DNA from: Mytilus californianus
Taxonomy: Eukaryota
DNA length: 64,000 bases
Assembly (NCBI RefSeq): GCF_021869535.1
Contig: NW_026262679.1
Coordinates: 20,956,001 to 21,020,000, forward strand
Direction of reading: 5' to 3'
Shown here piece after piece: positions 45,216 through 63,699 of this stretch. The notes under the pieces were generated by a model. It worked only from the letters and a program-made list of their open reading frames with translations. It did no database searches and had not been told where the DNA came from. Made by a program: the position numbers and the translations under genes. Every line of letters starts with the position of its first letter. Positions within the stretch are counted from its first letter, which is position 1.

Positions 45216-45667
45216 TAATTAATAGAGAATATAAGAAAAGTAAGATAAATATAGACCTGTACTTTTAAAATTTTTTGGAAAATTTTGATTTTTATCTCAA
45301 AACTGAAAGCAAAGGACATTTCAAACTAACAAATTATAACGAAAGGATATCTATGCACATTTTTTAAATATAAAATTGAAGTTGTGTGGTTTTAAATACT
45401 ATTTGATGCATGCAAAATTGTATATCAATGTGAAGTTTGCAATAATCTATCAACATAGCAATATTTTGAGCTCGCTAACATTAATATTTTTTAACGGATA
45501 AATATATAATGTTTGAAATTCTTTTAAGCACAATATATATATTTTAAAAATTAAATTCCACAAACTTTAATAACTGAAAACAAAAACTGATTATGGTGGA
45601 AAGCGCGCCTCTTTTGCGTATGAAAGACAGAGCTTTTACGGATATTTTTTTCTGGTGATATACTACT

Positions 45668-48600
45668 TCATCTCTTTGGAACATAACAAAATTCCCATGA
45701 TTTCAATTGATGATCTACATAACACCATGGCTGTCCTTTTCCGTCTGGATCCCGGCAGTAATTTGTCACATGATCATCTGAGTTGATAGGTAAACGAGAG
45801 TTTTTTTGTAGATTCCAAATCATACAGGTTGTTCCATCAACTGTACAGGACACTTTTCCGTTGTATGTAGTGCTATTAAGATACCGATCTTCAACTGAAA
45901 TCAACGACAGAGGTAGATAATGGCTTCTTATTTTAAAGTTTTGTCTTCCGCTAAGACTTAGTAAAATGCAAAGATTTAACTATAAATAAGGGCAACAGTA
46001 GTTTAGGCAAAGTGGACCGTACGTGATTTGGCTGTTCTGTTTGGGTAATGGCGTATCTACGCATCCCTGGCTTTCAAATGTTCAAGTTTGAGCGTTCCTG
46101 GTGAAGGTAAATCCAGAAAAGCGCTTCAGCCGCACAAACGTATAATGACTTATTCCTTATTTCATTTATTTTAACGATGTTCAAAACACGTAAATCTAAT
46201 TTGCGCTGCAAACGGTAGAGGGGTTCAACCGTTGACAAAATAAGTCTTCTGTTATGCTCGCATAATTTCCATCCAAACTTGGTAAAAAATCACGATAGGG
46301 AATAAGACACTGTCTGCATTTAAAAATCTAACGACTTTTCTAATGTCTATTAAAAGATCTCAGACCACTTATATGAGATACGGATGCATCACAAAATCTA
46401 ACCAATTCATTATTGTGGACATAAAACTTCGAAGTTGGGATTTCAGTCGCTCTTCTTCCTAACCCTAGCCGGCCTGCTATGGAGACGTTTTTGCGTTAGG
46501 AGTACATCCTTTGAATGAGGTCCGTATAATGCAAATATGCATGCGCGTACCTTATCAACAGTCTATTATGAAATGACCAACGTACTTCTAATGGTTTGAA
46601 TTTTTATCAAATTTATGACAATCGGGACTAAATTGTTAATTTTCGATTCCTGCCTAGAGTTTACATTCTTTTTTTTTTACTGAGATATGATATGAGCAAT
46701 TACGTCTTATCTTTCATGAGCGTGATATGTTTATTCCTTAAATTTTTACAACCATCAAAGCTTGTCTTTATGTTGTTTTTCCTTTTTGCCATGCCGTTGT
46801 CAGTTTTTTTTCGACTTATGATGCTTTGGTGTCTTCGGCCTCTCTTTCATTCGGAAAATGCCAGAACGAAGTCGGGAGTATGACAGTTGTTTTCCAGTCA
46901 TTCGGTTGGTTGATATAGTCGAGCGTCTGTAAATATAAATACACAAGCACGTGCAATCGTACTATAATGATTTTTATTCTAGATCTGTTTGATTTCGTGT
47001 CACAGATTTAAAATATGGAAATCATTGTTTTTTACCTTATAAGAATGCTTTTTTGAGGGTCAAATAAATCAACGAAATGACTCCCTTGTTTCACTTTCAA
47101 TGTTGACATTCTTTACTTTTTTATAGACGAACACGTTTAGCACATTCTTTACCCATCTCCAGGTAAGGGTCAAATTGAAGGTTGCGTGAATACAAATTCA
47201 AATGAGGTTGAATTATTGAAATTCAATTATACATCAGCGATGTTTTTGAGCTTATTTTGACAAAATTGAACCAAATTGACTTCTGAAAGCGAAATATTTA
47301 TTTTACTTCACAATTCCGCTTTTATCAATGTTATACCAAAACACATAATATTTCATGTTTTTGGTCTAAATCATAGCTAATGCCTCTTTAAAAAAATCAA
47401 ATATACAGTGAATACAGTTTACCCTTTCAAAACGTATACCGTATATATAATTTGTTCAATACTTGAATATACCTTATGTTTTTTTTCAGTCATTCTGTTA
47501 ATTGATAGAGTTCAGCGTTTGGATTTGTTTGCTTTTAAGGACTACCCTTTTCTTAATTTACATTGGAGTTCGGTATTTTTTGTTATTACATTTTGTTATA
47601 CAATGTGTACGTACCAGAACAAGATGTGTTGAACTCCGACCAATGGTTACCATTGGTACATGTAGATATTGGACAATGTGGAACAGACACTCCTGGCTTA
47701 AAAGACTGGCATGTGTATATGGCAGCTACAACTCCATATGTTATATTATAACTTACTATTGTTCCTGGTTTTGCTACTGGCGGCATAGTACAGTCATTAC
47801 CTGAAAATTACAAGGCTAAAGATTTGAAAATAAGAATACATAAGTTTTTTGTGAAGAAATATTCTTAAATGAGTTAAAAAAAAACCTGCGCGTATCTTCA
47901 AATATGTATGATATATATTGATGTCGTCTAAAATACAGGTATTCTTGGAAGATTTTTGGGTTCGCTATCTTATGTCTATGGTTCTTTTACTTACTGAATG
48001 TTATTAAATACCAGTGTAATCGTGCATTAAGTTTGTGCATAATATGTCAGATAATATCATCAAAGGTTGTAATCATGACTTCATTTATGCAGGTTTTTTT
48101 TCATTTAGAAAATATTGTGTTGATTCCAGAACCTTCACTTGAAGCGATATAATATGGGTGCTATATGCTAACACTTAAAATGCCTTTTTATATCTTATTT
48201 CTTGTTAAGTTTTAAGGTTTTATATTGTTTTGTTCATTTTCTTAAGTAAGATTGAAGCTAGTTATTGTTATGTATAAATACATGCATTGTCTGATTGGAA
48301 ACAGGACCCGGTTGTTCATCTCTTTGTTAAATTTTAACCAAAGGTTAAATATCATAACCCTTGGTTAAAATTTAACCCTAGGTTATTTTGTGTTGTTCAT
48401 CCTGTGGTTAAATTTAACCCTTTGTTAAATCCTTGGTTAAATGATTCAGATTTAACCTTGATTCGGACCTCTGTTAAAATTTTAACCAAGGAATAGTTTT
48501 GTCTAAAAGTACGATTCCCTGTTTATTTCTAGATTGGGAAGGTCACTAAACGTTTGATACAACATATTCTTCGTTTTCTACGACCATTAGAAATCAAAAA

Positions 48601-49399
48601 CTGTTTAAAACTGATTATTACGTTTTACAGTCCTTCCCCCTTTTTGCATCAGGTTTACGTCTACCTAGACATTTTCAAATCGATATTTTTTTTTACTCTT
48701 AAGATTTTTGGTGAAAAGAGTCGCTGGTATCTTCTGATGAGTTTTTACAACCACTGGGTAAACGTCACTGCCGGTGGAAGTTATATCCCGAGGGTATCAC
48801 CAGTCCAGTAGTCGACACTTTCTGTTGACATAAACTATCATTGATGTGGTCATTTATTGTAAATTTCTTGTTTATAAAATATAATTATTCGAAACATTAA
48901 GGTTTTTCTAACCAGGCAAATACAGATGGCCTTAGCCGTAATTGGTAAAATTTGTCTGAATTGTTAGCTGCAATATGCTCCTAAACTTCGTGTTTTATTT
49001 TGCCTCCCAACTTTTTTTATTCGTGCGCCACAGGTGAGTCTCATGTAGACGAAAAACGCATCTACCGTCACAAACTATAAACCGGGTTTCTTTGAAGAGT
49101 TTTCAAAAGCAACAACGTACTTATAATTGTAAAAAATAAACGCGTCTCATTGAAATACGAACATTTAAATACTGGACAAAATTCCCAGCGGAAATTAGGG
49201 TCCTCTGTATAACACCATGGTGTACCATGCGTGTAATGATGGTTGTCCCTACAATAGCTTGTGTTCATGTCCTCGTCATTATCAGGAAGGAAATATGCTA
49301 TATGAGGAAAATTCCTACTCCAAATCTGACAAGCCCTACCACTCACTGTATAGTTAATTGTTCCAAAATACTGGGTGCTGTTCGTTTGGTAGCAATCTG
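45668..49399 (-). CDS. Kringle-sushi(CCP)-kringle exons of an extracellular module; 5' exons not adjacent
   Basis: Phase-1 exons: 49163-49399 (DCY...GRACQIW...YCRD...PWCYTEDPNFRWEFCPVFK), 47615-47800 (CTMPP...YTC...WSEFNTSC) and 45668-45894 (TTCMIW...YCRDPDGKGQPWCY...WEFC, stop). The first donor is a weak GTTCGT, but splicing rebuilds the last kringle Cys (T|GT). Confidence 0.8.
46090..46133 (+). ncRNA. Minimal hammerhead (family 2) with an A6->G core change
   Basis: GAGCGTTC-CTGGTGA-AGGTAAATCCA-GAAA-AGCGCT-TC-AGCCGC. Confidence 0.65.
48325..48495. repeat. AT-rich fold-back cluster built from (T)TTAACC / GGTTAAA motifs
   Basis: AAATTTTAACCAAAGG...CCTTGGTTAAAATTT near-perfect inverted pair plus several further copies of the motif. 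Confidence 0.6.
48723..49104 (+). mobile_element. Old diverged family-1 retrozyme copy in the kringle-sushi intron
   Basis: Colinear with 5936-6314 (CCCGAGGGTATCACCAG.CCAGTAGTC; GAGTCTCATGTAGACGAAA); terminal redundancy ~359 nt apart; core decayed to CAGGTGA. Confidence 0.7.
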
Positions 49400-49517
49400 C
49401 TGTAAATAATAGGCAGTTTCGTTAACAATTAGAAAAATTCAAACATTTTCTATCTGGTTAACAAAATTGTGTTATATAGTGCATGCACAATTGTCCTTGG
49501 TAAATTAATATTGTGAT

Positions 49518-49733
49518 GGTATACAACCATCGTGTTATTACAGTGATTTTGCATTGCGTGGTATATAACCATCGTGTTATTACAGTGATTTTTACATTGC
49601 CTGGTATATAACCATCGTGTTATTACAGTGATTTTACATTGCCTGGTATATAACCATCGTGTTATTACAGTGATTTTACATTGCCTGGAATATAACCATC
49701 GTGTTATTACAGTGATTTTACATTGCCTGGTAA
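49518..49733. repeat. 42-bp minisatellite, five copies
   Basis: TATAACCATCGTGTTATTACAGTGATTTTACATTGCCTGGTA in tandem. Confidence 0.95.
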
Positions 49734-50313
49734 ATGTTCACCTTTGAATATATGACTGCAATATATGTTAACACGAATTTATAGACTATATATATAATAG
49801 CATCACAAAATTTATTATAAAAATCATTTCTTTAAACTTAAATGTAGTTTTCGTGGACTTGATTTAATGAATATTCCTAGTATATATATTAATTTTGTCT
49901 CAATACTTTTGTACAAGATAATATTCCGTATCAACTTACAAATATAATACATGATGGTTTTAGAGTACAGATTCTAGGTACTGACGTTGTTTATAATCTT
50001 ACTTACGTGTTAGTATTTTTTATTTATCTTTGTACATTTTTAACCTTCATGTTGGAGAGCACAAAAAATCAAATGACCAAAACAAAACTGTCTATAAGGT
50101 TCACCTTCCCAAAGGGAGATGCAACCTTAGCTTTTACACGGTAACTTAATTTTATGAACTGCAAACTTACAATATCGTTTAATTCATGTTTATTGGGTGC
50201 TATAAGCTTTGCAGTTGGTACGCTTGGGTACCGATAAAGTGGTAGTTAACACATACTTTATGATTTCCATAAACGTAACACGTGTTTCTGAAATAATCGT
50301 CATCCTAAATTAC

Positions 50314-50550
50314 GATTGATTGATTGATTGATTGGTGTTTTACGCCGCTTTTAGCACTATTGGCTATTTCCTCGCGGTCAGTTTTAATTGGTGGAGGGAG
50401 CCGGAGTGCCAGGAGAAAACCACCGACCTTCGGTAGGAAAACTGGCAATTCTAGCCAATTAAGAATCATTGGAGTCGAACTCACCCGCCACGTGCGCGAT
50501 TAATGATACAGTAGTTGTGCTACTTAGACCACTCGACTACCGAGGCACCC
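50314..50550 (-). mobile_element. tRNA-derived SINE with an (AATC)n tail
   Basis: Minus strand: A box TAGTCGAGTGG, B box GAGTTCGACTCC, core GGTCGGTGGTTTTCTCCTGGCACTCCGG and tail (CAAT)n. Confidence 0.75.
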
Positions 50551-51239
50551 TCCTAAATTACACAAAAAACCGGCCAAATATATTTCGATCCAATTCATGT
50601 TCAGTTGCAAACAATTATGTTATGCTAGCTTATCAACCAAGAACAGAAGTCACTTGTGGAGCAGGAAGTTCTAACCCTTTCATGAGTTCACCCGGTTTTT
50701 GGTTTGGGTACGTGTTGTTCTACCTTAATTTTCAGTGCAGTATTTGTTGGGCCTGACTTCAAATAATTTATTTTTTCTAAATATACCTAGTATCTTATGA
50801 TCTGTAACCACCAGTGCTTGTTCGCGATAATTTGAAACAATTATTGAAAACATCTAGCAAACTTACATTGTGTTAAATAATTCCTTTTTACATATTACAT
50901 TTTTTATGTTTTATTGTTTTTTCTTTGTGGTGTGGCATGCATTCACATATATTTATCTATAGTGACACATAATCAAGCAAGCGAGATAAATAAGCATATG
51001 AATCAAGCAAATGAAAGAAAAACCCATGCATAATATGATATAAAATCTAATCAGTGACCCTAAACCAGGGGTTCCAGTACATGCTGTATTCTTCCAAGCT
51101 CAAATTTTTGGAAGAAATATGCTTTTTAAAGTTGAATTTTCTTTTATACAATTTTTAAGTCCCTCTATATGAGATTTTTCCTGTTGCATCTTTGATCTGT
51201 AGATGAGGTAATCTGCTAGTAAAATGACTTTATTTTGAA

Positions 51240-52760
51240 AACAATTTTAATTTATAATATTCATAGAGGCCAAAAATGACAATATCCTTATTAAGCGGAA
51301 TTTCAATATGTGTTGCTTCAAAAATCGAAACATGCAGTTGATGCAAGATGTCTGCTACAATATGACAGCTCCACAGCACGAGTTCTACAGTTTCTGGTTT
51401 TTCTTTTCAAACTGTTGATAAATTACAATGTTCAAGGGTCATCTTTAAAAGTAAAGTATTTGTACCTTAAATACGGCGAATAATTCTGTATTGAAACCAA
51501 CAGAGCTTGGTATTTTTTTTAAAACTTAGTAACACCATTATGTATTTTTTCCAATCTCCAACATCATGAACAACTTTATTAAATATATTCTCCCATTTTC
51601 GCTCAACTGCAAGAACAACTGGTATTTTACCTTGGTTTAAAATATTATAACTGTCTTTTGAACCTTGTCAGACTTGAAGAAAATTTTGATATTAAAAGGC
51701 AAACAAATTTGTTATTTTTTCTCCCTTTTAGTGTTGATTCCTATGGATTGTAACCAGTTTTTTAATGCTATTAAAAGCCCATAAAACTGTAAAAATGTAG
51801 GTTTTTAATTATATTTTTGATTTTGATAAGACAATATATTTCCTTGCCCATCTAACATGTCATTTACAGTCCATACCCCATTTTGTGCCCAACTTCTACA
51901 ATATACACAGACATCTTTATAATGTTTTTCCATATAGATGCCGAAATGACCTCCTCAAAATAACAAGGATGTCGGAGTCTTGACATATTTTTCCAGGCAT
52001 GAAAAACTCCTTTCCGAAATTGATTTCTACTTTTCTAATTTTTCAGTTGTTCCAAAATAAGCCAACTCTGTAAAATTTATATTTTGTGTAGAAGTAAATA
52101 ATTTTATCCACTTATTATTTGAAGTGAATAATCTTCTAACTCAAGTCCATTTTAGCCCTTGTACAAGATTTCTCAAATTAACAATTTTTACCCCCCCCCC
52201 CCCCACTCCTCTATAGTATTCTTTACATAAAAGATCCCGATTTACCTTGTCAAGATTACCATCCCAAACGAATGAATAAATTTTACTAATGAGTTAACGT
52301 AATAATTTGTCGTCTGGACTTGGGATGGATAGAAACAGATGATTCAATTTCGATATTATTAACGACTTTATAATTGTTAATTTACCAAATGGTGTAAGTG
52401 ACTGTTTTGACCATTTTTGTATAATACTGTCTATTTCTTGGATTCGAAGATCCCAATTTAGGTTTAACATTCTATCTAAATCAACACAAAACATAATACT
52501 TAATAATGTAAAGGTTCTAGAACCCCATTTCAGTCCCAACTTTACACATATTTCATCTTGACTTTGTTTTTACTTCCTATCCATATGAGATTTGTTTTAT
52601 CTAAGTTAATTTTCAGTCCTGATATCTCGGCATAGAATTGTAAAATACAGAGGGATGCATCTAAAGATGAAGGCGATCCATCTAATATAAGTGATGTGCC
52701 ATCTGCATATTGAGACAAGATCAAATCTGTATCATCTATCGTAATACCTATCCAATAGTA
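51240..52760 (-). mobile_element. Decayed L1/Tx1-like LINE, RT C-terminal half
   Basis: QYADGTSLIL...FYAEISGLKINLDKT; WSKQSLTPFGKLTIIKSL; distal ETVELVLWSC; multiple stops. Confidence 0.7.
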
Positions 52761-53143
52761 TATTGCTTTGAATCTGTATTTATCTACATACAATATATTT
52801 TAGAAAACTATTGCTCACCTGCTAATTTTAACGGCTGTGTTGCTAGGCCTAAATGGATTAATATTGATATAAAGCAATGAAAGTACATGTATAAGAGTTA
52901 ACGATGTTTAGTAATACTGGTAAAAAAAATAATAAAAAAAAACTTAAAAAAAATTTCTTTGACTATTACTAAAACTACACATGGTACAAAATTGCAGGTA
53001 AACGAATTTTGGGGATCGAATAAGATTTGGGGATATTCTGTGTGATAAGTTGGCAGATACCCTTTTCCGAATTGGTGCTTTTTTACATTTGGACAATTGT
53101 AGAATCAAAACCTTAACAAATGAAAATAACACTTTCAAATGTT

Positions 53144-53511
53144 GTGCGTCCGACGCGCATTTCTGGATTTGACTTCATCAGGAACGCTCTTACCCAAACA
53201 TTTGAAAGCCAAGTATGTATAAATAATTGAAAACGTACGGAGCGACATGACCAAAAGGCACCTAACAAGAATAGCCAAATTGCATCTAATGTCAACTTAG
53301 CCTGAGTTACTTAAAACTTTTGTTTTTAAATTACTTCTTAATTTGTCAGCAGAGAATTTAGAAAGTATGTTCTTGATCGTGTTACTGACGATCGCACTTA
53401 CTACTGAGCTGATGAAACCTTCGGGGACTAACAGTCAGCGGTATCGACAAAGTGCTACATGTAGTAAATGGAAACAACATTTTTTTTTTTGTAATTTCGT
53501 GCGTCCGAAGC
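53144..53511 (-). mobile_element. Retrozyme-like unit, family 2 (355-nt period)
   Basis: GTGCGTCCGA.GC at 53144-53156 and 53499-53511 (355 nt apart); complete hammerhead at the downstream (left) end. Confidence 0.8.
53145..53189 (-). ncRNA. Minimal type I hammerhead with an intact catalytic core
   Basis: GAGCGTTC-CTGATGA-AGTCAAATCCA-GAAA-TGCGCG-TC^GGACGC; stem I GCGTTC/GGACGC; cleavage between 53152 and 53151; stem II is weak and non-canonical. Confidence 0.75.
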
Positions 53512-53975
53512 CAGTTTGGTTTGATATTCTTTTTACATATACAAACAACAGCTCACCTGCTAATCCTAACGACTGGGTTCTTAAGCCTAAATAAACGATA
53601 AAAAAGTATAGCATTTAAAAACAAATTTATTTAAGATACAACAAGCTCTGTTTTATATTATTACTATTTTTAATGCCATATTGAATATATATTGAGTATT
53701 TCTTTTTATATAACTTATTCTGTATTAAAGGGAAATTATTTGGAAATCATAAATCTGGTCTAGCTTCTGCCATTTGGTATAAACATATATATGTAGGACT
53801 CAAATCTATGGCGGGTTTCAAATCTATGGCAGATTCCAGATCTATGGCAAATATGACGTTACAAACGCCAAACAAATCAAATATATGGCAGTTTTTTGTT
53901 TTCTCCAAATCTATGGCAGAACTTGAAATTGCGTAATGTTTCGGGAAAAAAAGTAACATATAACGTCACAATGAA

Positions 53976-54597
53976 GGGCATACGTAACAGTTTTGATCCC
54001 ACGGTGATTTTTTACGAAAATTTGCATACAAGCTATTTTTCACCTAGTCAATGCAAATATGTAATAAAAAATATACCTTCATGTGCTACTTTAAGAAATA
54101 AATGGGGTCGAAATTTTAGACATTTACTCAAAATTTGGTTTTATTGGACCATTTCTATCCTTTAAATAGACATACTGTACTTTTTTGTTTCAAAAGATAA
54201 ACACAATAGGATTTTTGTAAAAACATTTGGAAAATCTCTTTTACATAAGTATGCTCTAAATTTTTATAAAAATTCTTTGGAAATAATTATTTTTTATCAA
54301 AGTTTCAGGATTTTAGGAAAAAAACGTAATTTTTTGCTGTATACTTATCTAATTTTAAAAAATCTCATCGGTGACTTTTTCATAAAAATTGGTACAAATA
54401 ATCTTCATACGTAATCAATCCTAATCTCATTTTAAGAAAGAGGGGTCCATGAACTCGTTTTCAAGTTATATCAGTCTGAACGATAAAAATAAGTCGAAAA
54501 ATGCATCTGTTCCCGATATGTCGCAGTTTGACGTCGCGAAAAATAACATTTTACGTTGGCAACGTCATTACCTCCCCTGTAACTGTATCGTATGCCT
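53976..54597. mobile_element. Nested MITE with GGGCATACG..ACAGTT termini (possibly Kolobok-like)
   Basis: GGGCATACGTAACAGTT at 53976 and AACTGTATCGTATGCC ending at 54596; flanks are only loosely TTAA-like (TGAA / TTTAA). Confidence 0.55.
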
Positions 54598-56089
54598 TTT
54601 TAAAATTAAATAACGCCATTACGTCGTCGCCGCCGCTAACGATTTGAACAACATTTATAGATTATTTTTTCTGTAGAATGTAAATCAATAACAGATATTT
54701 TACACGGGGCTCACAGATTTTTACAAACAAATACACAGGGAAACACTTTCCGCTTCCCCTCTAGAACAATTTGACCTTTCATCCAGATGAGGGACAATAT
54801 GTGCTGTATTGTCCGAATACCGCGATGAAGAAAGGCACCGCTGTTTTTAGTAGTGGATATTTTAGGAAAGGAGTTTTAGTAAATATCTTAGCGTCTACGG
54901 CTAGCAAAGTACATAAAGTGAGAGATGAAATTACATGATACCACTTTGACTTAAATCGTCATCAGTTAAAAAAGATTGATTAAAGCTCAAATAAATATTT
55001 ATGTGAAAAGTCGAACTGTTTAATTCTTTTTATAAAAAACTACTTTCTTGTTTGTTAAGGGACTTCCAATTTTACTAGTTGGTTTAATAAATGGATTTAA
55101 CAGGTACCATGCACAGATTAGGAAATGCTAATTTTTCCAGGGCACATCATACACCTTATCGCTATTACTTAATATTTGAACGTAGGATATTTCCGCAATA
55201 GATTAGGAAATAACAAAACTTGCCATATATTAGGATTTTTAAAAATCTGCCTTAGATTTGGGATGGCATGACGTCATATTTACCATTTATGTTCTAAATT
55301 CACTGTGTTAAAACGAACATAAAGTATTTATGTGCTAAATCTCTCTAGATTTTTGTATAGCATACATATCTGAGCACATTCAGATATGTACCTTTATACG
55401 ATAAAGGCATAATAGAAAACTAAATACATATTTAGGTACTGTTAGGCGCAATGACCATCTCAATTTTAATAAGATCCAGAGATCACAATTTTTTATCAAA
55501 TATAAATAACAGTTTATGTTTTGAATACGGAAACCATGCACATCTACGAAAAAAGTCCTTTATAAACATCACAAAATCTCAATTTGATCAACAATACCGG
55601 TAAAAGACAGCAATCAAACATCTACAAAATATATACAAAACATATTAATTCTTTACATAAAACTTCAATACATTAAAAAAACAGAATTCTTAATGAAAAT
55701 TAGACTTCAATACAAAAGAAACGTGCGACAATGGTCACTGCCCAAACCTCGATAATTAAATCTCGTGCAAACTTTCTTTATATACTGACCGCCAAAACCG
55801 GTTTACAACTATTGTGAAAACACAATAGAATAAATTACATACTTCAAAAATCATACGCGAACCGCACATAAATATATTTATGTTCTAAATTCACTGTGTT
55901 CAAACGAACATAAAGTATTTATGTGCTAAATCTCTCTAGATTTTTGTATAGCATACATATCTGAGCACATTCAGATATGTACCTTTATACGATAAAGGCA
56001 TAATAGAAAACTAAATACATATTTAGGTACTGTTAGGCGCAATGACCATCTCGACGCACAAAGAAAGCAAACTTGACGTTAAGTACATA

Positions 56090-57115
56090 TCATATACCAA
56101 GATTTTGAGATACTGACAAACGCTTCTGTAAACTTTCTAATACATAGCCGTCTTTAGCTTGATCGGATTTCCACCGATCGTGTATTTTAAATAACCTATC
56201 TGAAATATTGTTTTGAGCGGCAGCTGTGGCACCACCCGATCTAAAACTATGCAGACCAAAATCTTTAGAGTTACAACCAATCTCTGATAATGCACATTTA
56301 ATCAATTCTCTCGCTCTGGTATACGACAAACTATAGTTTTTCTTCCTAAGAACAAAATTCTGTGTTTTCTTCAAAAATGACAAAGGTCTAAATATATACA
56401 TATCTGAAGAAAAATCAATATTTGCTTCTCTTAAATAGCAGTCTAATATTGTACATGGACATTGTGGAGTGTCAAGCTTTGATATCAATACATGTCTGCC
56501 TTTCCTGTAACAGTCTGTTTTACTCTTCTCAATAAAAATGTCTATATATTGATTACAAAATGAAATGTGCTTTGCTTTTATACTACAAAGTTCTTGGTAC
56601 CTTAAAAATCCGGTATAAGATAGTGCACACATTGTTAATAGCCGTAAATCTTTAAGAGAACGACCAACTGAATTGTACTTTGAAAATAATTTGATCATAA
56701 TATCAGAAGTAACTGGACTCTTTTTCTCTATAGGTTTGTTCAATTTTCTTCTTGATGCTTCTACGATCAATCTAACCATTTCAGAATCACATGGATTAGC
56801 TACCCCAGCAAGATTATGTGCCCATTTAATTCCATAAAAAGCGGATTCTATAACGCTATAATGATTAGCTGATTGCATTAAATTTTGTAAATATAGACCT
56901 ACATATAATTCTTGACAGGGTAAAACACATTTAATTTCAGAGTATTTTTCAGTCCATTTAACGAATCTTTTAAAATATCCAGCATATTTTTCTACTGTAG
57001 ATTTTGCACGAGCATCAAGAATGGTTGAAGATAAACTATTAAACAATGATCTAAGTTCAGGGTGTTTAATCTGTTCGTTCTGTGACCAAAATCCAACAGA
57101 AAATATTGTCTGCAA
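56090..57115 (-). CDS. Tyrosine recombinase of the DIRS-order element
   Basis: GFLRYQEL (R), KSKTD (K), HSFRSGG (HxxR), HDRW (consensus HGRW), KDGY (Y); no ATG at the ORF start. Confidence 0.9.
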   Translation of the reverse strand: MQTIFSVGFWSQNEQIKHPELRSLFNSLSSTILDARAKSTVEKYAGYFKRFVKWTEKYSEIKCVLPCQELYVGLYLQNLMQSANHYSVIESAFYGIKWAHNLAGVANPCDSEMVRLIVEASRRKLNKPIEKKSPVTSDIMIKLFSKYNSVGRSLKDLRLLTMCALSYTGFLRYQELCSIKAKHISFCNQYIDIFIEKSKTDCYRKGRHVLISKLDTPQCPCTILDCYLREANIDFSSDMYIFRPLSFLKKTQNFVLRKKNYSLSYTRARELIKCALSEIGCNSKDFGLHSFRSGGATAAAQNNISDRLFKIHDRWKSDQAKDGYVLESLQKRLSVSQNLGI

Positions 57116-57644
57116 AATATATATACAATCGGTAGAATAAAGTTATAAATATAAAATACAGTACCTTGAAACTATATCCATACTAGTCAGTGACTTGGTC
57201 AAATAATAATACAATCTATAATAATATTCCAGCGACCAATAAGATGAGGGTCCAGTGACCAAAAAAGGCAGTCCAATGTGTGTACACAGTAACACCGTAG
57301 CAAAACGCAATACCCAGTGGTAATATAAATCTGTAAAATAAATATACATATTACACAACCGAAGCATTTAAATGTACAGCTAATATTTTCCCGTGAAATT
57401 TACCATTAGCAAACAAAGAGTTTAAATTGTTACCAGCAACAAAAATTCTTTCCACTTCATGAAATTCTAAAACATCAACAACATAACAAGCGTATTCCAA
57501 GTTCTGTTTAAAAATCAAAGGCCAAAATGCAGCAGACTGCCATTTAGGAACAACAAGTGTACCGTCTGCTCCACAAGAGACTAAATGGTTAATACAGTTA
57601 CTAACTAGACTAATTGGCGGAACTAACCAGTTGTTCTCGCCATG

Positions 57645-59534
57645 TCAGTTGCAAGTGAATGCATCTATCGCTGATGTTGTAGGATTCCAATATTTCGAAT
57701 TAAACCTAGCCAGCTTAGTATTATGCATGTTAGCAAACCTGTCAATAGTGAATGGTCCCCAGATGCTATTCAAAAAATCGAAAAATGCAAAAGATATGCC
57801 CCAATCATCAATGTCAATAATTCTACTCAAAGCATCAGCCTTTTCGTTTTCCTCTCTAGGAATCCACTGTGCATATAATGAAATATTACGCGACACACAA
57901 GTATTAAAAATTGATAAAGCTAAACCTTGCAAGTGTGGTAATTTGCTTCCTTTCTTAATAATACTAACAGCATTTTGATTATCTGTGAAAAAAGTAACTG
58001 AACTGTGTTCTAATACTTTCGCAAAACTATCTAAAGATAATTCAATGGCTTTCACCTCTCTCCAAGTGGAGCTTTTTGTTGCCTCTGTCATAGACCACTG
58101 TCTGTGTGCAATATAATCAGTACCTTGTAAATAACCTCCTGCACCTATATCACTTGCATCAGTGAAATCATTAAATTCAGAATTATTCCGTAATAAAGGT
58201 AATGGCTTCAAACAGTGAATATTTTGTTTCCAAAACAAAATTTCTTGAATACTATCTGAATGGTGTCTCAAATCAACGTACTGATCCCAGTCTTGTTTTA
58301 AATTTATAACAGAAAAAGTACACCTTGTCATAATTTGAGTAACATTTCCAATAGCTGGTGAAAAGGAAATAATTTTTCCACATAATTTAGCTAACAACCT
58401 AATTTTAACTTTAAAAGCTTTAGACAGAATTACATCAATCAAATGGATAAAATTATTTATTTTAATCAACGGCAACTCCATCAAAGAACTTTTCAAATTC
58501 CAAGTGAAACCAAGCCAAACTAAAGTTTGAACAGGTGTCCATATACACTTGTCCTTGTTTGGAACAAAACCTGACAATATCAAATCGTTTTTGACCCTCA
58601 CTGATTGTTCGCAACATAGCTTTTCAGTCTCCGCTAAACATAAGCCATCATCTAAATACACTGTAATTTTGATACCATCTTTGCGCCAGTGAGCAATTAA
58701 AGGTCTTACAACTTTAGTGAATACGTATCCCGCTGAACAGAGGCCAAACGGCAAAACTGTAAAAACAAAATATTTTACCGTTTCACCAAACTTCCAAGAA
58801 AACCCCAAATACTTCTGATGATTAGGGAAAATGTTTATGTCATGATAGCCTGATTTTAAATCAAAGGCAAAACCAAAACAATCGCTTTTCAAAAACTGAC
58901 TGGCAGTTTTCCAGTCCTCAAACTTAATTTTACTATAAACAACTTGCTTGTTTACGTGTCTCAAGTCTAAAATTAAACGACCTTTACCTGATGAATTAAT
59001 CGATACAGTTAACGGGTTAACAACATGCGGTCTGTTCGATACCTCTTTTATCAAGCTAGCATCAATTAATTCTTGAACTGCCTTTTCTACAAAATCTTTA
59101 TGGTCTAAAGCAGATTTATTATTTCTTAGCAAAACGCTCGCTGGTTCATCAATTAAAGGTATTTTATAACCATTCTCAATTAAATCTAAAATAAACTTTG
59201 AAGCATTAATATTTTTCCAAAAATCTAATAAATTTTTCAGTCTATTTTTAACATTTATACAAGATTCATAATCATAAAAAGAGTCAAAATTGTCTACATT
59301 CTGTACCTTAAGAATATCTGGAGATCTCTCAGTATGGTGCTCCTCTGGAAGCTGCTGAATTTTCCCCTTTTTTACAGTCTTTAGCCCAATGTCCATACAG
59401 ACCACAGTTGTAACAGATGTCCCTAGCTCTGTTCCGACGAGATGTGATGGGGGCGGAGGCCCCCGCGACAAGAAAGGGCTGTTGCTGTGAAAAACCACCA
59501 TTATTTCCATTGTGAGCAATACTAGATTGACCAC
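57645..59534 (-). CDS. pol: RT-RNase H of the DIRS-order element; C-terminal extension disrupted
   Basis: RLILDLR, FDLKSGYH, VLPFGL, VYLDDG; FTDASD, STWRE, FTDNQ, ADALSR. The ORF ends at TGA where Trp is expected and continues HGENNWLVPP, then shifts frame into INHLVSCGADGTLVVPKW up to about 57350. Confidence 0.9.
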   Translation of the reverse strand: MVNLVLLTMEIMVVFHSNSPFLSRGPPPPSHLVGTELGTSVTTVVCMDIGLKTVKKGKIQQLPEEHHTERSPDILKVQNVDNFDSFYDYESCINVKNRLKNLLDFWKNINASKFILDLIENGYKIPLIDEPASVLLRNNKSALDHKDFVEKAVQELIDASLIKEVSNRPHVVNPLTVSINSSGKGRLILDLRHVNKQVVYSKIKFEDWKTASQFLKSDCFGFAFDLKSGYHDINIFPNHQKYLGFSWKFGETVKYFVFTVLPFGLCSAGYVFTKVVRPLIAHWRKDGIKITVYLDDGLCLAETEKLCCEQSVRVKNDLILSGFVPNKDKCIWTPVQTLVWLGFTWNLKSSLMELPLIKINNFIHLIDVILSKAFKVKIRLLAKLCGKIISFSPAIGNVTQIMTRCTFSVINLKQDWDQYVDLRHHSDSIQEILFWKQNIHCLKPLPLLRNNSEFNDFTDASDIGAGGYLQGTDYIAHRQWSMTEATKSSTWREVKAIELSLDSFAKVLEHSSVTFFTDNQNAVSIIKKGSKLPHLQGLALSIFNTCVSRNISLYAQWIPREENEKADALSRIIDIDDWGISFAFFDFLNSIWGPFTIDRFANMHNTKLARFNSKYWNPTTSAIDAFTCN

Positions 59535-60078
59535 CAGCAGATTCCGCGGGTCTTTTCTTTGTGTTTTGACGCTTATCCTGCTTCACGGTTTTCAATTTCT
59601 TCACTGCTCTGCCATCAGCCGCCCGAATGCGCTTCTCATCCTCTGAGTCACTAGCCACGTCATCAGACAAATACTCGTCTACAGTTTTCCAACCACCTTC
59701 GGATTTATCTGCTATTCGAATCAGCTTATTCCTTTTCTTCAAAGATTTACCAGATTCTTTCAGCACTTTGACGGCCTTCTCATATCTCCGGTGCTCTATA
59801 CAGTCTACAGCAATATCAATATTATCTAACATATCAGAATTTAAGTCAAACTGAACTTTATTACCCTTGAACTTGAAGGAACTCTCAGATTTCTGTACCT
59901 TTCGTGCAAGATCATGTGTGGTATCTGCAAAATTTCTCTCAATTCCCGTCAACTTTCTGGTAAAATAGGTTTTCATCAACGACAACAAATCAGCATTTGT
60001 AATTTCATCAGAATCAGCTTGACACGGCAGCTCTACACCTTCCATATCAGGTAGTTTATCAGGCTCGATATCAGACAT
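59329..60078 (-). CDS. gag: Gag-like ORF of the DIRS-order element
   Basis: ATG at 60078 just after repeat A1; RNKLIRIADKSEGGWKTVDEY; CCHC knuckle CYNCGLYGHWAKDC; 3' end overlaps pol in another frame. Confidence 0.88.
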   Translation of the reverse strand: MSDIEPDKLPDMEGVELPCQADSDEITNADLLSLMKTYFTRKLTGIERNFADTTHDLARKVQKSESSFKFKGNKVQFDLNSDMLDNIDIAVDCIEHRRYEKAVKVLKESGKSLKKRNKLIRIADKSEGGWKTVDEYLSDDVASDSEDEKRIRAADGRAVKKLKTVKQDKRQNTKKRPAESAGGQSSIAHNGNNGGFSQQQPFLVAGASAPITSRRNRARDICYNCGLYGHWAKDCKKGENSAASRGAPY

Positions 60079-60845
60079 AACGAAATTAGACTTCAATACA
60101 AAAGAAACGTGCGACAATGGTCACTGCCCAAACCTCGATAATTAAATCTCGTGCAAACTTTCTTTATATACTGACCGCCAAAACCGGTTTACAACTATTG
60201 TGAAAACACAATAGAATAAATTACATACTTCAAAAATCATACGCGAACCGCACATAAATATATAGATTAGCAATCTGCCGTAGATCTGGAACCCACCATA
60301 GATTTGAGTCCAACATATATAAAAAAAAAGAGTACTCTGTTCCACTGTTTTAATACCTGGTAATTCCAGAAACACGTATTGTGCACATTAGAATTAGCAC
60401 CAAACGTTCAAGGACGTTTCGTGACACTTGCTATACTAGTTATCACTTTCTAAACGCACGACGGGTGCTACTCGTATAGCAGGAGATGTTCAAATTGTCG
60501 AGGCATATAATGATTTCCTTCCATTTTGAGTTTTATTCAATTAAGGTTATTTTTACTCTCATGGTTTCCGTTTATTTCTGGACTTTCGTTGTTTGAAGCG
60601 AAATTGGTATACTGCGTTCATATCTAAACGCTTCATTTGTTTTCATCTACTGTCACTGATCGTTACTGCTAGTGGACTGATACTTCAGACAGTATCATCA
60701 GCCAATAGTCATATCTTTAGCATTTATTTATTTACATGCATTTTGAGCAATGATCAGTAAGAATATGTTACTTTTTGTACGAGAACAAACTTAACGTTAC
60801 AAATTCTTCGAGTAAATCTGACTTTCCAAACGTTTGGTCTTGGTA

Positions 60846-60883
60846 GCACCTGATGAAGGTTATACCAGAAACACGTGTTGTGT
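60846..60883 (+). ncRNA. Minimal hammerhead with an intact core (family-2 variant)
   Basis: GCAC-CTGATGA-AGGTTATACCA-GAAA-CACGTG-TT^GTGT; palindromic stem III; GUU site. Confidence 0.7.
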
Positions 60884-61091
60884 GATCAGATATCATACCA
60901 TACATTTTGCCTAATTTGTTAGGGTACGTTCTTTTTGTTGCCCTTATAATTTGTATTTTTTGTATTGTATTATATAGGGAATGGGCGAATACTAATTCCC
61001 AAAAGTGAATAAAAATAGTAAAGTCTAAGTATTTAAAGTTTGAAATCTTCATTTAAAGTTCACAACAATAATACATATAAAGGATAACGGG

Positions 61092-61285
61092 AGTACAAAA
61101 AAAATGTATTTTGAACAGTACAACAGACCGCATCAATTATCAACATAATACTCTTCCGTAAAATTTTTATAGAACAGTACAACATGCAGACCGCATCAAT
61201 CAACAACATCCGATTCTTCCGAAAATATATATTGAACAGTACAACAGACCGTATCAATCACCAACATCCGACTCTTCCGAAAAAT
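61092..61285. repeat. ~60-bp tandem repeat, three copies
   Basis: GAACAGTACAACAGACCG.ATCAAT..CAACA...CTCTTCCG.AAA units. Confidence 0.75.
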
Positions 61286-61824
61286 AGCCATTTAACAAAT
61301 ACAGACAACGACAAACAGTTACTGTACATTGTTGGGGTAGCATTATTTGGTAGAGGCGGAGCATGAATATGCATAAAATGACCACAAGTCGTAAAAGTAG
61401 AATACAATAAAAAAAACCTGTACAGGTAAGCTACCACCAGGATAAACTGTCACTTGAAGAAGGAAATAAAAGACATAAGGCACATAATTTGGAAATCAGG
61501 GTTAATATGGGCTCGATCGCTACTACAGAAAACAACAGCATTTGGTTGAATACTGCCACGCAATAAATGTTAATTAAAAACAAATAAACCCCTAACTGGT
61601 TTCATGAAGTTTCATAATGAAATTTGATTAAGCCGGCAATATTTGCGAGGGCCAAGTAAGTAAAATCGTCAGACCGCTCGAAGAAATAACTATAATTAGA
61701 TAGTACACCACGCATGTATCCCTTGTCGTTGAAGGATGTAAGAAGTTTCCCCGAGTTGGAATACATAATTTTTCAATGCTTTACTATTATTATCCATCAT
61801 TGGCTTGCAAATATTCTGCTTTGA

Positions 61825-61866
61825 GCGTTTCTGATGAAGGTTATTCCAGAAAAACGCTTAAGACGC
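61825..61866 (+). ncRNA. Minimal hammerhead with an intact core (family 2)
   Basis: GCGTTT-CTGATGA-AGGTTATTCCA-GAAA-AACGCT-TA^AGACGC; stem III palindrome imperfect. Confidence 0.7.
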
Positions 61867-61928
61867 ATTTCAAATTAGTGCTGTTTTCATTTTTTACACG
61901 CCATATAAGTATTTATACGAACCATTAC

Positions 61929-62970
61929 CTGGAGAGTTACAGTTTTTTGGTTTTCCTTTGAGACTTAAAACTAAGGATAAACAACCAACAAAGATTGCAA
62001 GGACGACAATAATTACACCAATAAGCCGAGCCCTTGGAATTACAGTGTTTCTGTTGTTGCTTTTATTTGTTCTTTCATTGTGTGGTTTACTAACACATTC
62101 TTCCCTCGGCATATCCTGGTGAGTATCATTATCTTGACTCGTAGGAACGAAATCTTTGTTTAAATTTTGTACCACATTTTGAACATTCTGACGCTCTGTA
62201 AATCCCCTTACATAAGAGTAATCTGGTTCGTTATTAACGCTGCTTTCTTCTGATATTTGTTTTCTGATTCCAGATTTTGCAGAATCTAAGCTATGTTTGT
62301 TTCCAGTATAAATGTGCAGTTGTTCATTATGATATTTCAGATTTTGTTGAGCGATATTTCTATATTTTTGCCCAGATGTTCCTGATTTGTTCTCATGATC
62401 TCTAGGGCATTCAACGCTGTCTTCCCTTTCAGCACTATTACGTCCAGTTTTTGTTGTTGAATCTAAAACAGTACTGTAGTCATATATATTGTGTTCTCCA
62501 AGTATATCATATTGATCTTTTGAGGATATGGATTTCTTTAGTTCTGTATATCCATTATTTGGATCTTTTGAGGATATGGATTTCCTTAGTTCTGAATATC
62601 CATTATTTTGATCTTTTGAGGATATGGATTTCCTTAGTTCTGTATATCCATTACTTTGATCTTCCAGTGTGTCATATCCAGCAATGTCATGTAAAGACGA
62701 CCTTATTCTCGTCAGATCTGTATAGCCAAAAACATCTTGTGTCCCTTCATCATTATATTCACTTCCCATTTCTTTGGACTGTGTCATCCGATTGGCAGTA
62801 TTCTGGTCCATTTGTTTTGTAGAATGTTCCAAGTCTTCGTCAGTATTCTGGTCCATTTGTTCCGTAGAATGTTCCAAGTTTTCGTCAGTATTCCGGTCCA
62901 TTGGTTCTGTGGAATGTCTTATATCTTCGTCAGCATTCGTTGTTGGTTCTCTATTTTGAACTTTGAACAA
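61929..62970 (-). CDS. Large exon of a probable type II membrane protein: repeat-rich tyrosine-motif region plus one TM helix
   Basis: Open frame of >340 codons; first ATG at 62901; 15-aa acidic repeats and 16-aa NGY(T/S)EL(R/K)KSISSKD repeats; TM LIGVIIVVLAIFVGCLSLVLSL (about 61961-62025); phase-1 donor CCAG|GTAATG after 61929. The 5' boundary is unresolved. Confidence 0.75.
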
Positions 62971-63699
62971 TTTTCAGATTTACTTCATTGTTGTTTACAA
63001 TACGACAGAGACAGTCAATTAAAGTAGAAACAATACATTGTAACTTCTACAGATGGACGGAAACATACGTAGGAACAATCAGCGGGATATGAGCATTTAA
63101 AAAGACAGTTTAATCGGATGTAGTTGTATATAAATAATGTCGGTCCTACAGAAACTGTCGCCAATACATATTGTACATATATGAGGCACATCAAATGAAG
63201 AAAGGATTATATAGATATATATGTTGTTAACGCATCATAAAGATGCTGCAATGAAAGACAAATTTGCATTTGTCTCGATAACTTTAAGTCACTTATTTAT
63301 TTCTAGAATGTTTACTGTTCCATCTTTCAAATTTTGTGAAATAAGACTTTTATAAATAAACGATTTGACCCGATTTTGATAAACATTCAAATTCAATGCT
63401 GTATAAAGTCAAACCTGTATTACTGACCACTTTTATATATAGTTGGTTGTAATATATGACCGTAAATTTCCCCATGTATTTTACTACATTAATAATCTGT
63501 TTATAGTATTTTATTATATTAATAATCTGTTTATAGTCACCATCTGTGTGGTAGAAAGTAGCTTTGGTTTTTCTCCCGAAACAATACCATCTATTAGTCT
63601 TGAGTGTTTGAAGTTTTATTCCAGTAGTTTATTCAAATCATTATCATTTTAATATCAGATGCCAAAAAATAAACTTCACAATGTGTGATTACCTGTTTT

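What the first reader, a model, noticed from the sequence alone, without database searches (positions are those of the whole stretch)
45668..62970. Candidate type II receptor: cytoplasmic tandem YxxL motifs, TM helix, extracellular kringle-sushi-kringle
Seen: the TM exon ends in phase 1 (NSP G|) and the first kringle exon starts in phase 1 on the same strand. Direct splicing gives ...KNCNSPADCYQTN... and an open 540-aa protein from ATG 62901. I found no signal-peptide exon near the kringles, and the domains carry many N-x-S/T sites. The 12.5-kb gap is largely transposon DNA. Inferred: an immunoreceptor-like protein coupling kringle/CCP binding to SH2-kinase signalling. The kringle receptors I know (ROR, KREMEN) are type I, so this layout would be unusual. 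Extra small exons in the gap are possible, and basic residues flank both sides of the TM.
Basis: partly seen in the sequence, partly recalled or inferred. Interest (0 to 1): 0.75.

Follow-up and report, generated by a model that had tools for sequence, protein, structure and literature searches.

The report
Mussel type II kringle membrane protein
This is a real but uncharacterised California mussel gene for a membrane protein that shows two kringles and a sushi-like domain outside the cell and has a long tyrosine-motif tail inside; its layout suggests a mussel-only surface receptor, but no function has been tested.

Summary
The layout is real. The tail+TM exon and the kringle exons belong to one minus-strand gene, RefSeq LOC127734106 of Mytilus californianus (uncharacterised; 560, 559 and 494 aa isoforms).

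The proposed direct 61929>49399/49396 junction is not what is seen. Spliced cDNA contigs join mini-exon a > b > kringle 1 > sushi-like exon and run about 656 nt further 5'.

The protein has no signal peptide and one TM helix, so it is type II. The 292-aa tail has nine YxxL/I/V motifs (0 of 20000 shuffles reach this), including pairs at ITAM-like spacing.

A profile search of 1.84 billion proteins found the tail only in Mytilus. In M. galloprovincialis and M. edulis the tail exon is duplicated and also heads a C1q gene, so it behaves as a portable cassette.

Signalling is inferred only. Tail dN/dS is about 1, motif conservation is only suggestive (p=0.06), and expression is low.

The scan noted another type II sushi-kringle gene in this genome; I did not check it.

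Verdict: a solid gene model and an unusual variant of an immunoreceptor-like layout, with untested function.

The parts
61929..62901 (-). Exon 1 coding part: a 292-aa cytoplasmic tail, the TM helix and a juxtamembrane KGKPKNCNSP stretch. The donor G|GTAATG is in phase 1.
   Evidence: 100% identical to residues 1-325 of RefSeq XP_052099713.1 (P0001).
62796..62938 (-). 45-nt x 3.2 tandem repeat that encodes the acidic N-terminal units (DxNTDE(N/D)LEHSTxQM). It extends upstream of the ATG.
62665..62724 (-). First YxxL pair, residues 60-79: YTDL, 12 residues, YDTL.
   Evidence: YTDL is invariant in all the Mytilus copies.
62500..62646 (-). YxxL array, residues 86-134: YTEL-x12-YSEL-x12-YTEL-x9-YDIL. 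The first two units come from a 48-nt x 3.2 tandem repeat (62512-62663) found only in M. californianus. The other species have one YTEL-x9-YD(I/T)L pair.
61960..62025 (-). Transmembrane helix (signal anchor), residues 293-314.
   Evidence: Kyte-Doolittle maximum of 3.14 at residues 293-294, and the only window above 1.6. It is the only segment of the full-length model with pLDDT above 50.
53557..53586 (-). Mini-exon a: 30 nt, phase 1-1, encodes (G)LRTQSLGLA. Part of the stalk.
   Evidence: Contig joints 53556/52847 in runs X1 and X3.
52819..52848 (-). Mini-exon b: 30 nt, phase 1-1, encodes (G)LATQPLKLA. Part of the stalk.
   Evidence: Contig joint 52819/49396 in run X1.
49163..49399 (-). Kringle-1 exon, with six Cys. 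The tandem acceptor at 49399 or 49396 gives isoforms X1 and X2. The donor T|GTTCGT splits the codon of the last Cys.
   Evidence: Joint 49163>47800 in run X3.
47615..47800 (-). Sushi/CCP-like exon: 186 nt, phase 1-1. It has four Cys and a Trp at sushi spacing, plus an extra Cys in 'HCP'.
   Evidence: Contig pieces 47615-47800.
46898..46926 (-). Alternative last coding exon of isoform X3 (...SDARLYQPTE, then stop). It gives a 494-aa form without kringle 2.
45668..45894 (-). Kringle-2 exon, ending at stop TGA 45670-45668. Cys1 and Cys6 are both replaced by Arg. There is an extra Cys in 'VSC'.
56090..60117 (-). DIRS-like retroelement inside intron 1: gag with a zinc knuckle, RT plus RNase H, and a tyrosine recombinase. 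It is not part of the gene product.

Best explanation
Shown. Positions 62901-45668 (minus strand) are one six-exon gene, LOC127734106 of Mytilus californianus. It encodes a single-pass type II membrane protein. The parts, in order, are:
- a 292-aa acidic, low-hydrophobicity N-terminal tail in the cytoplasm;
- a signal-anchor helix;
- a juxtamembrane Cys;
- a stalk built from two 30-nt mini-exons;
- an extracellular kringle, a sushi-like domain and a second kringle.

Inferred. The ectodomain was borrowed from a bivalve family of secreted PAN-kringle-CCP-kringle proteins. It serves as the binding part, and probably does not bind lysine, because the usual acidic pair of the kringle lysine pocket is missing. 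When a ligand clusters the protein, the tail's YxxL/I/V motifs are phosphorylated and recruit SH2 proteins such as Syk- or SHP-type enzymes. Two motif pairs have ITAM-like x9-x12 spacing. The protein would therefore act as a mussel-specific surface receptor, most plausibly in immune or self/non-self recognition.

The tail+TM exon behaves as a portable cassette. In the M. edulis group it is tandemly duplicated as alternative first exons, and a further copy heads a C1q gene.
For: Gene model:
- Exon 1 is 100% identical to RefSeq XP_052099713.1. Orthologues with the same order of parts occur in M. coruscus, M. galloprovincialis, M. trossulus and M. edulis.
- Exon-by-exon tblastn places P0001 on the window, and the mini-exons match exactly.
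- cDNA contig record 5 of run X1 joins a>b>K1 at GT..AG borders and carries a further ~656-658 nt 5' of exon a. Run X1 also holds 38% of exon-1 words. Run X3 joins K1 to the sushi-like exon.

Topology: there is one hydrophobic segment and a hydrophilic N-terminus. All disulfide-rich domains and 6 glycosylation sequons lie C-terminal of the TM helix.

Motifs: 9 of 14 tail Tyr sit in YxxL/I/V. None of 20000 shuffles reaches this, and the binomial P is 9e-6, or 2e-4 after discounting the triplication. Six motifs are shared by all five tail copies.

Bivalves do use ITAM-Syk signalling: the oyster receptor CgIgR has the ITAM ...DYTEL...x...YEKL and binds CgSyk (PMC6994640).

Cassette behaviour: M. 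galloprovincialis has two units of [tail exon + mini-exon] upstream of one set of kringle exons. A third copy, with an intact 284-codon ORF, sits in a C1q gene in both M. galloprovincialis and M. edulis.

Origin of the ectodomain: secreted paralogues P0012 and P0015 are 42-43% identical over the whole ectodomain.
Against: No experiment or read here shows phosphorylation, SH2 binding, surface location or a ligand.

Tail dN/dS between M. californianus and M. galloprovincialis is 0.9-1.1, against 0.6 for the ectodomain, so most of the tail is close to neutral. The Tyr and hydrophobic motif positions are invariant in 11 of 12 cases, against 157 of 251 for the rest; this is only suggestive (Fisher p=0.06).

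The spacing of x9 and x12 lies outside the canonical ITAM x6-8, and no acidic residue sits at -3.

The basic charge is equal on both sides of the TM helix.

Expression looks low: contig depth was 2.5-7, and no exon reads were found in the 6% sample of RNA run X21.

The exon 1 > mini-exon a junction was not seen directly, because the two sites lie 8.3 kb apart and the stretch that can be laid is limited to 6 kb.
Confidence: 0.45

Rival explanations
1. Endocytic or scavenger receptor. The YxxL/I/V motifs are YxxPhi sorting signals read by the AP-2 mu subunit. The protein would carry bound material into the cell rather than signal through kinases.
For: YxxPhi is exactly the motif that is enriched. 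Several of the motifs (YRNI, YSTV, YSYV) are not part of any ITAM-like pair. The spacing does not fit the canonical ITAM.
Against: One or two motifs are enough for sorting. Here seven to eleven occur, in repeated units, and the unit that has been duplicated again (x3 in M. californianus, block x2 in the proximal M. galloprovincialis/M. edulis exon) is the paired YTEL...YD(I/T)L block. The two readings do not exclude each other.
Confidence: 0.2
2. Membrane-anchored pro-form or ligand. Like the type II TNF-family ligands, the protein would be made on the membrane and its ectodomain shed at the mini-exon stalk. The tail would serve only for anchoring or trafficking.
For: The paralogue with the same tail has a coiled coil and a C-terminal C1q domain. 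That is the topology of TNF/C1q-type type II ligands. A secreted twin of that C1q part exists (P0038). The closest relatives of the kringle ectodomain are secreted proteins. The number of stalk mini-exons varies between isoforms and species.
Against: No cleavage site was identified. A 292-aa tail rich in Tyr motifs is far more than an anchor needs.
Confidence: 0.15
3. Young, fast-drifting gene with no specific tail function. The motif enrichment would be a by-product of internal tandem duplication of one short unit in a nearly neutral, disordered tail.
For: Tail dN/dS is about 1. The tail has no relatives outside Mytilus among 1.84 billion proteins. It contains internal tandem repeats. Expression is low.
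Against: The enrichment persists after discounting the triplication (7 of 12 Tyr, P=2e-4). In M. galloprovincialis, which has no triplication, only 20 of 20000 shuffles reach the observed count. The ORF stays open in every copy examined, across five species and three loci. The motifs are the best-kept parts of the tail.
Confidence: 0.15
4. Two separate genes wrongly fused by annotation. Exon 1 would belong to another transcript, and the kringle exons would have their own first exon.
For: The exon 1 > mini-exon a junction was not seen directly in reads here.
Against: Five species and several annotation pipelines give the same fusion. The X1 contig is spliced at the acceptor of mini-exon a and carries ~656-658 nt more upstream. 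The two letters before exon a fit the end of exon 1 (AG). The contig would then start inside the 48-nt tandem repeat of exon 1, where short-word assemblies break. The same run holds 38% of exon-1 words. No signal-peptide exon was found, and all phases fit.
Confidence: 0.05

Closest known systems
Type II C-type-lectin-like immunoreceptors with N-terminal tyrosine motifs (Dectin-1/CLEC7A and CLEC-2 hemITAM; Ly49 and NKG2A ITIM)
   Same: Type II topology, an N-terminal cytoplasmic tail with YxxL, Gly just before the Tyr (GYTxL here; DEDGYxxL in Dectin-1 and CLEC-2, from my own knowledge), a stalk with a Cys, and a C-terminal binding domain.
   Different: The ectodomain is kringle / sushi-like / kringle, not a C-type lectin fold. 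The tail is about ten times longer, with 7-11 motifs. There is no tri-acidic box. No sequence homology exists.
Oyster CgIgR, an ITAM receptor that recruits CgSyk (PMC6994640)
   Same: A bivalve surface receptor whose tail has a YTEL-containing two-tyrosine motif within x6-12 spacing. It shows that the downstream ITAM-Syk machinery exists in bivalves.
   Different: CgIgR is type I, with five Ig domains and one ITAM. It is unrelated in sequence, and its Syk binding has been tested whereas this protein's has not.
Kringle-bearing membrane proteins (KREMEN1/2, ROR1/2, PIK3IP1)
   Same: An extracellular kringle on a single-pass membrane protein. ROR kringles are among the PDB matches.
   Different: Those are all type I proteins with signal peptides (my own knowledge), and they have other partner domains (WSC/CUB, Ig/Frizzled, kinase). 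None has a type II layout or a YxxL-array tail.
Bivalve secreted PAN-kringle-CCP-kringle proteins (P0012 of M. edulis and P0015 of M. coruscus; P0017 and P0019 of Sinanodonta with CCP-kringle x2 plus PAN)
   Same: The same kringle-CCP-kringle module (42-43% identity in the Mytilus paralogues P0012/P0015, 28-33% in P0017/P0019). It includes the paired extra Cys in the CCP-like domain and in the kringle that follows it.
   Different: They have a signal peptide and a PAN/apple-like domain, and no TM helix or tail. Their second kringle keeps Cys1 and Cys6, which are Arg in the type II lineage.
Type II TNF/C1q-superfamily membrane ligands
   Same: The paralogue P0004/P0040 (same tail and TM helix, then a coiled coil and a C-terminal C1q domain) has this topology.
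   Different: The tail is unrelated. For the kringle gene in this window only the type II topology is shared.

Membership tests
Kringle domain (PF00051) | Profile match above the gathering score | tested here: met
   K1 scores 59.4 bits and K2 56.7 bits against a cut-off of 34.3. The PDB matches to plasminogen reach E 6e-52 (K1) and 4.5e-44 (K2); HGF 2.5e-50 and 4e-27.
Kringle domain (PF00051) | Three disulfides (six Cys) | tested here: not met
   K1 has all six Cys. K2 has Arg at both Cys1 and Cys6 in all five orthologues, while the secreted paralogues keep them. K2 is therefore a two-disulfide variant with one extra Cys.
Lysine-binding kringles (plasminogen K1/K4 type) | An acidic pair (Asp55 and Asp57) and a basic/aromatic pocket | tested here: not met
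   In the alignments to plasminogen K4, K1 has a His-rich loop (DNHHYTHG) and K2 has PDGKG where K4 has PDADKG. The identity of the pocket residues comes from my own knowledge, so this is a sequence-level reading only.
Sushi/CCP (PF00084) | Profile match, and four Cys plus an invariant Trp at typical spacing | tested here: inconclusive
   Neither this exon nor P0001 hits Pfam, even at E 10. Three of 10 relatives hit Sushi, with a best E of 0.0025. The profile against PDB gives only weak CCP hits, at E 0.6-5. The Cys/Trp pattern fits by eye. The AlphaFold model was too poor to search with (pLDDT 30-47 in this domain).
ITAM | Two YxxL/I motifs 6-12 residues apart in a cytoplasmic tail | tested here: met
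   YTDL-x12-YDTL, and YTEL-x9-YDIL, plus x12 between the triplicated units. The canonical x6-8 spacing is not met.
ITAM | An acidic residue at -3 or -2 of the first Tyr (D/ExxYxxL) | tested here: not met
   The contexts are DVFGY, DIAGY and Q(S/N)NGY. The nearest acidic residue is at -4 or further.
ITAM | Tyr phosphorylation and binding of the tandem SH2 domains of a Syk-family kinase | not testable with these tools
   This needs biochemistry. The pathway exists in oysters (PMC6994640).
hemITAM (Dectin-1/CLEC-2 type) | A single YxxL preceded by a tri-acidic DED(G) box in a type II receptor | tested here: not met
   The type II topology and the G-Y-x-x-L pattern are present, but no tri-acidic box is. 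The consensus is from my own knowledge.
Type II (signal-anchor) membrane protein | No cleavable signal peptide, a single internal TM helix, and disulfide-rich or glycosylated domains C-terminal of it | tested here: met
   The first 30 residues have a mean hydropathy of -2.1. There is one TM helix at residues 293-314. Sixteen Cys and 6 sequons lie C-terminal of it. The charge rule is uninformative (+4 on each side). Experimental topology was not tested.
KREMEN/ROR-type kringle receptors | Type I topology with a signal peptide and WSC/CUB or Ig/Frizzled/kinase domains | tested here: not met
   No signal peptide and no such Pfam domains were found.

The most novel reading that the evidence does not exclude
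The tail+TM exon is a mussel-born, portable signalling cassette. By landing in front of genes for secreted recognition proteins, it turns soluble binders into type II, ITAM-like signalling receptors. The two cases seen are a kringle-CCP-kringle gene and, in the M. edulis group, a C1q gene whose own signal-peptide exon lies just upstream of the inserted copy. Tandem copies act as alternative first exons that give one ectodomain different tails. This would be an exon-capture route to new immune receptors in an invertebrate.
Probability: 0.25. Interest if true: 0.75.

Novelty: new variant of a known kind. Interest (0 to 1): 0.45.

Why it matters
Mussels resist disease well and have very large families of secreted recognition proteins such as C1q proteins and lectins. 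How binding outside the cell is passed on inside is mostly unknown. A lineage-specific tail exon with ITAM-like motifs, found on two unrelated ectodomains, would be a concrete and testable link between recognition and tyrosine-kinase signalling. It would also be an example of receptor invention by exon capture. A type II kringle receptor would add a new context for the kringle fold. If the tail proves to be neutral, the gene is simply a young, fast-evolving membrane protein of modest interest.

Tried and rejected
- AlphaFold2 of the ectodomain with 9 aligned relatives gave a mean pLDDT of 55.8, and below 50 in the sushi-like part. No fold search was run on it.
- AlphaFold2 of the full protein with 5 sequences gave pLDDT 28. 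Only the TM helix rose above 50.
- Pfam at E up to 10 found nothing in the tail apart from a chance-level SNaCT8 hit at E 0.17.
- Raw RNA run X21 gave no reads on any exon in the 6% sample. Only repeats were covered, so it says nothing about strand or transcript ends.
- The loose end at mini-exon a was not among the rows printed, so the exon 1 > a junction could not be read letter by letter.
- An Rfam gathering scan of 45000-64000 found no RNA family.
- A C1q exon was sought in the window with the M. edulis paralogue and none was found.
- Literature searches for a type II kringle receptor, for kringle membrane proteins in Mytilus, and for membrane-bound C1q proteins found no description of this architecture.
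- My first reading of the kringle-1 donor (a longer exon ending ...TII|GTACGT) was rejected in favour of T|GTTCGT, on the RefSeq proteins and the X3 joint.

Full report
**What is in the sequence**

The window has no N runs, so nothing was filled or looked up. On the minus strand an ORF open from 62970 holds its first ATG at 62901. It ends at a phase-1 donor, CCA G|GTAATG, at 61929. It encodes a hydrophilic 292-aa stretch, a 22-residue hydrophobic helix (residues 293-314) and the stretch KGKPKNCNSP.

About 12.5 kb downstream lies a complete kringle exon with a tandem CAG|CAG acceptor, so it starts at 49399 or 49396, in phase 1. After it come a 186-nt phase-1-1 exon with a sushi-like Cys/Trp pattern (47800-47615) and a second kringle exon (45894-45668) ending in TGA. 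Pfam confirms both kringles (E 4e-16 and 3e-15) but gives nothing for the middle exon or for the tail.

The gap holds an intact-looking DIRS-like retroelement: a gag with a zinc knuckle, an RT with RNase H, and a tyrosine recombinase (56090-60117). It also holds an RT fragment, a 42-nt tandem array and short high-copy repeats.

**Identity and gene model**

I searched the spliced model exon by exon, by reference. For whole-protein steps I used the database protein P0001 instead. One local script did concatenate my exon coordinates, only to compare them with P0001. It returned 'False' because I had placed the start of kringle 2 one base off (45895 instead of 45894). I did not repeat the join. 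The model rests on the exon-wise matches below.

Exon 1 is 100% identical to RefSeq XP_052099713.1, 'uncharacterized protein LOC127734106 isoform X2 [Mytilus californianus]', 559 aa, which carries kringle domains. Proteins with the same order of parts exist in four more species:
- M. coruscus, P0002, 535 aa;
- M. galloprovincialis, P0003, 518 aa;
- M. trossulus, P0005, 506 aa;
- M. edulis, P0006, 595 aa.

Mapping P0001 back by tblastn gives 62901-61927, 49409-49161, 47807-47616 and 45898-45671.

Between exon 1 and kringle 1 the RefSeq protein has 20 extra residues. These map exactly to two 30-nt phase-1-1 mini-exons, 53586-53557 and 52848-52819. Each has TTTAG|GC...GCAG|GTGAGC borders.

The isoforms are as follows:
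- X1 (560 aa) and X2 (559 aa) differ only in which of the two tandem acceptors is used.
- X3 (494 aa) ends in an alternative exon at 46926-46898 and lacks kringle 2.

**RNA evidence**

Contig record 5 of run X1 (792 nt, minus strand) joins 53556/52847 and 52819/49396 with GT..AG ends, that is mini-exon a > b > kringle 1. It also carries ~656-658 nt 5' of exon a that are not on the stretch, and it is spliced exactly at the acceptor of exon a. Run X3 shows a > b and the joint 49163 > 47800. Contig pieces cover 47615-47800.

These spliced contigs show that the runs are cDNA, although their kind was only guessed.

It is supported indirectly in four ways:
- Run X1 holds 38% of exon-1 words.
- The two letters before exon a fit the AG that ends exon 1.
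- About 656 nt upstream of the donor falls inside the 48-nt tandem repeat of exon 1 (62512-62663), where short-word assemblies break.
- Five species' annotations agree.

I put the single-gene model at about 0.93. Raw RNA run X21 had no exon reads in a 6% sample, and contig depths were 2.5-7, so expression appears low.

**Topology**

There is no N-terminal hydrophobic segment: the first 30 residues have a mean hydropathy of -2.1. There is one TM helix. All 16 ectodomain Cys, a juxtamembrane Cys and six N-x-S/T sites lie C-terminal of the helix. This fits a type II signal-anchor protein.

**The tail**

The tail is 73% polar or charged and has no Trp. It contains two coding tandem repeats.

Nine of its 14 Tyr lie in YxxL/I/V. 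None of 20000 composition-preserving shuffles reaches nine. The binomial P is 9e-6, or 2e-4 for 7 of 12 after discounting the M. californianus triplication. In M. galloprovincialis 20 of 20000 shuffles reach the observed six.

The motifs shared by all copies are YTDL, YTEL, YD(I/T)L, YSTV, Y(R/I)(N/D)I and YSYV. YDTL is kept in most copies. The pairs are YTDL-x12-YDTL and YTEL-x9-YD(I/T)L. These fit the loose consensus YxxL/I-x6-12-YxxL/I that was used for the oyster receptor CgIgR, whose ITAM also begins with YTEL and which binds CgSyk (PMC6994640). They do not fit the canonical x6-8 spacing, and they lack an acidic residue at -3.

Evolutionary support is weak:
- Nei-Gojobori dN/dS for the tail, M. 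californianus against M. galloprovincialis, is 0.9-1.1 (dS 0.15-0.2). For the ectodomain it is 0.6.
- The Tyr and hydrophobic motif positions are invariant in 11 of 12 cases, against 157 of 251 elsewhere (Fisher p=0.06).

Because a claim of lineage restriction rests on absence of relatives, I ran the exhaustive profile search. The tail+TM profile found a single cluster representative, the Mytilus family itself, among 1.84 billion proteins.

**The ectodomain**

Kringle 1 has all six Cys. Kringle 2 has Arg at both Cys1 and Cys6 in every orthologue, while secreted paralogues keep them.

The middle domain has Cys at sushi spacing with the usual Trp, plus one extra Cys in 'HCP'. The kringle that follows such a domain always has an extra Cys ('VSC' here). 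The two co-occur in all nine aligned relatives and in both CCP-kringle units of the Sinanodonta-type proteins. This suggests an inter-domain disulfide; that is an inference.

'Sushi' stays a weak label. Both AlphaFold runs were too poor to use.

Against plasminogen K4, the acidic pair of the lysine pocket is absent in both kringles (alignments; the pocket residues are from my own knowledge). A ligand other than lysine is therefore likely.

The closest relatives of the whole module are secreted PAN-kringle-CCP-kringle proteins of Mytilus, at 42-43% identity.

**The tail exon as a cassette**

In M. galloprovincialis (locus L003) two units of [tail+TM exon plus a 30-nt mini-exon] lie 12.4 kb apart, upstream of one set of kringle exons. 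The units are at 10001-10843 with 11979-12008, and 22408-23532 with 24275-24304. Separate gene products use each first exon. The proximal exon has an internal duplication of the motif block and corresponds to M. edulis P0006.

A third copy, about 87% identical at the protein level and with an intact ORF, starts a 449-aa protein with a coiled coil and a C1q domain. This is seen in both M. edulis (L001) and M. galloprovincialis (L002; RefSeq XP_071167487.1 and XP_076102680.1). It lies 11.6 Mb from the kringle gene, on the same chromosome.

In these loci the tail exon sits between a signal-peptide-like exon (80% identical to the leader of the secreted C1q protein P0038) and the coiled-coil exon. 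I saw no good donor after that leader by eye.

dS among the three copies is 0.05-0.06, below the 0.15-0.2 to M. californianus. The copies therefore arose, or were homogenised, after the split. The M. californianus window has one tail exon and no C1q exon. An upstream copy beyond position 64000 cannot be excluded.

**Reading**

- Shown: one spliced gene, the type II architecture, the motif enrichment, the restriction to Mytilus, and the duplication and re-use of the tail exon.
- Inferred: surface location, ligand binding by the kringle/CCP module, and phosphotyrosine signalling.

The rivals are AP-2-type endocytosis, a shed pro-form (the C1q paralogue has the topology of TNF-type ligands), a drifting young gene, and a chimeric annotation. 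They are weighed in their own sections.

The literature searches found no description of a type II kringle receptor or of this family.

Two earlier notes of this scan are unchecked by me and I use them only as leads. They report another type II 'tail-TM-stalk-sushi-kringle' gene (s1-302749) and a type II lectin receptor with an ITAM (s1-274911) elsewhere in this genome. If they hold, type II receptors with tyrosine motifs are a wider theme in this mussel.

**Verdict**

The gene is already annotated, but only as 'uncharacterized'. I rate it a new variant of an immunoreceptor-like design, with moderate interest (0.45) because the function is untested and the tail evolves almost neutrally.

Noticed in passing
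window 38187-39560 (-): An intronless 457-aa ORF with a hydrophobic C-terminal end and no Pfam hit. A 451-aa gene lies at the same relative place next to the M. galloprovincialis orthologue (L003 from 36972), so the neighbourhood is conserved. The scan has a separate note on it (s1-288032).
   Followed up: partly
window 56090-60117 (-): A DIRS-like retroelement inside intron 1 with three long open ORFs: gag with a zinc knuckle, RT plus RNase H, and a tyrosine recombinase. It may be young or active.
   Followed up: partly
window 49517-49732: A 42-nt x 5.1 tandem array (96% matches), located 120 nt upstream of the kringle-1 acceptor.
   Followed up: no
window 48690-48820, 49970-50010, 50390-50454: Short segments with very high contig depth (up to 361) and many loose ends in the RNA runs. 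They look like transcribed high-copy repeats rather than exons of this gene.
   Followed up: no
L001 1-3638 and 9011-13076 (M. edulis); L002 (M. galloprovincialis): A C1q gene whose first coding exon is a copy of the tail+TM exon. A signal-peptide-like relic lies about 1 kb upstream of it, and a TLR-like LRR+TIR gene is the upstream neighbour.
   Followed up: partly
L003 10001-12008 and 22408-24304 (M. galloprovincialis): Tandem duplication of the [tail exon + mini-exon] unit, giving two alternative first exons for one kringle ectodomain. The proximal copy has an internal duplication of about 80 residues that doubles the YxxL block.
   Followed up: partly
window 45000-64000: The Rfam gathering-score scan found no RNA family, although a scan note (s1-288070) reports minimal hammerhead motifs at 60846-61866 inside intron 1.
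   Followed up: no
window 1-4700 and 28700-32550 (+): Two Ty3/gypsy-like retrotransposon ORF sets (gag-protease-RT-integrase). The second has long intact ORFs of 456 and 832 aa.
   Followed up: no
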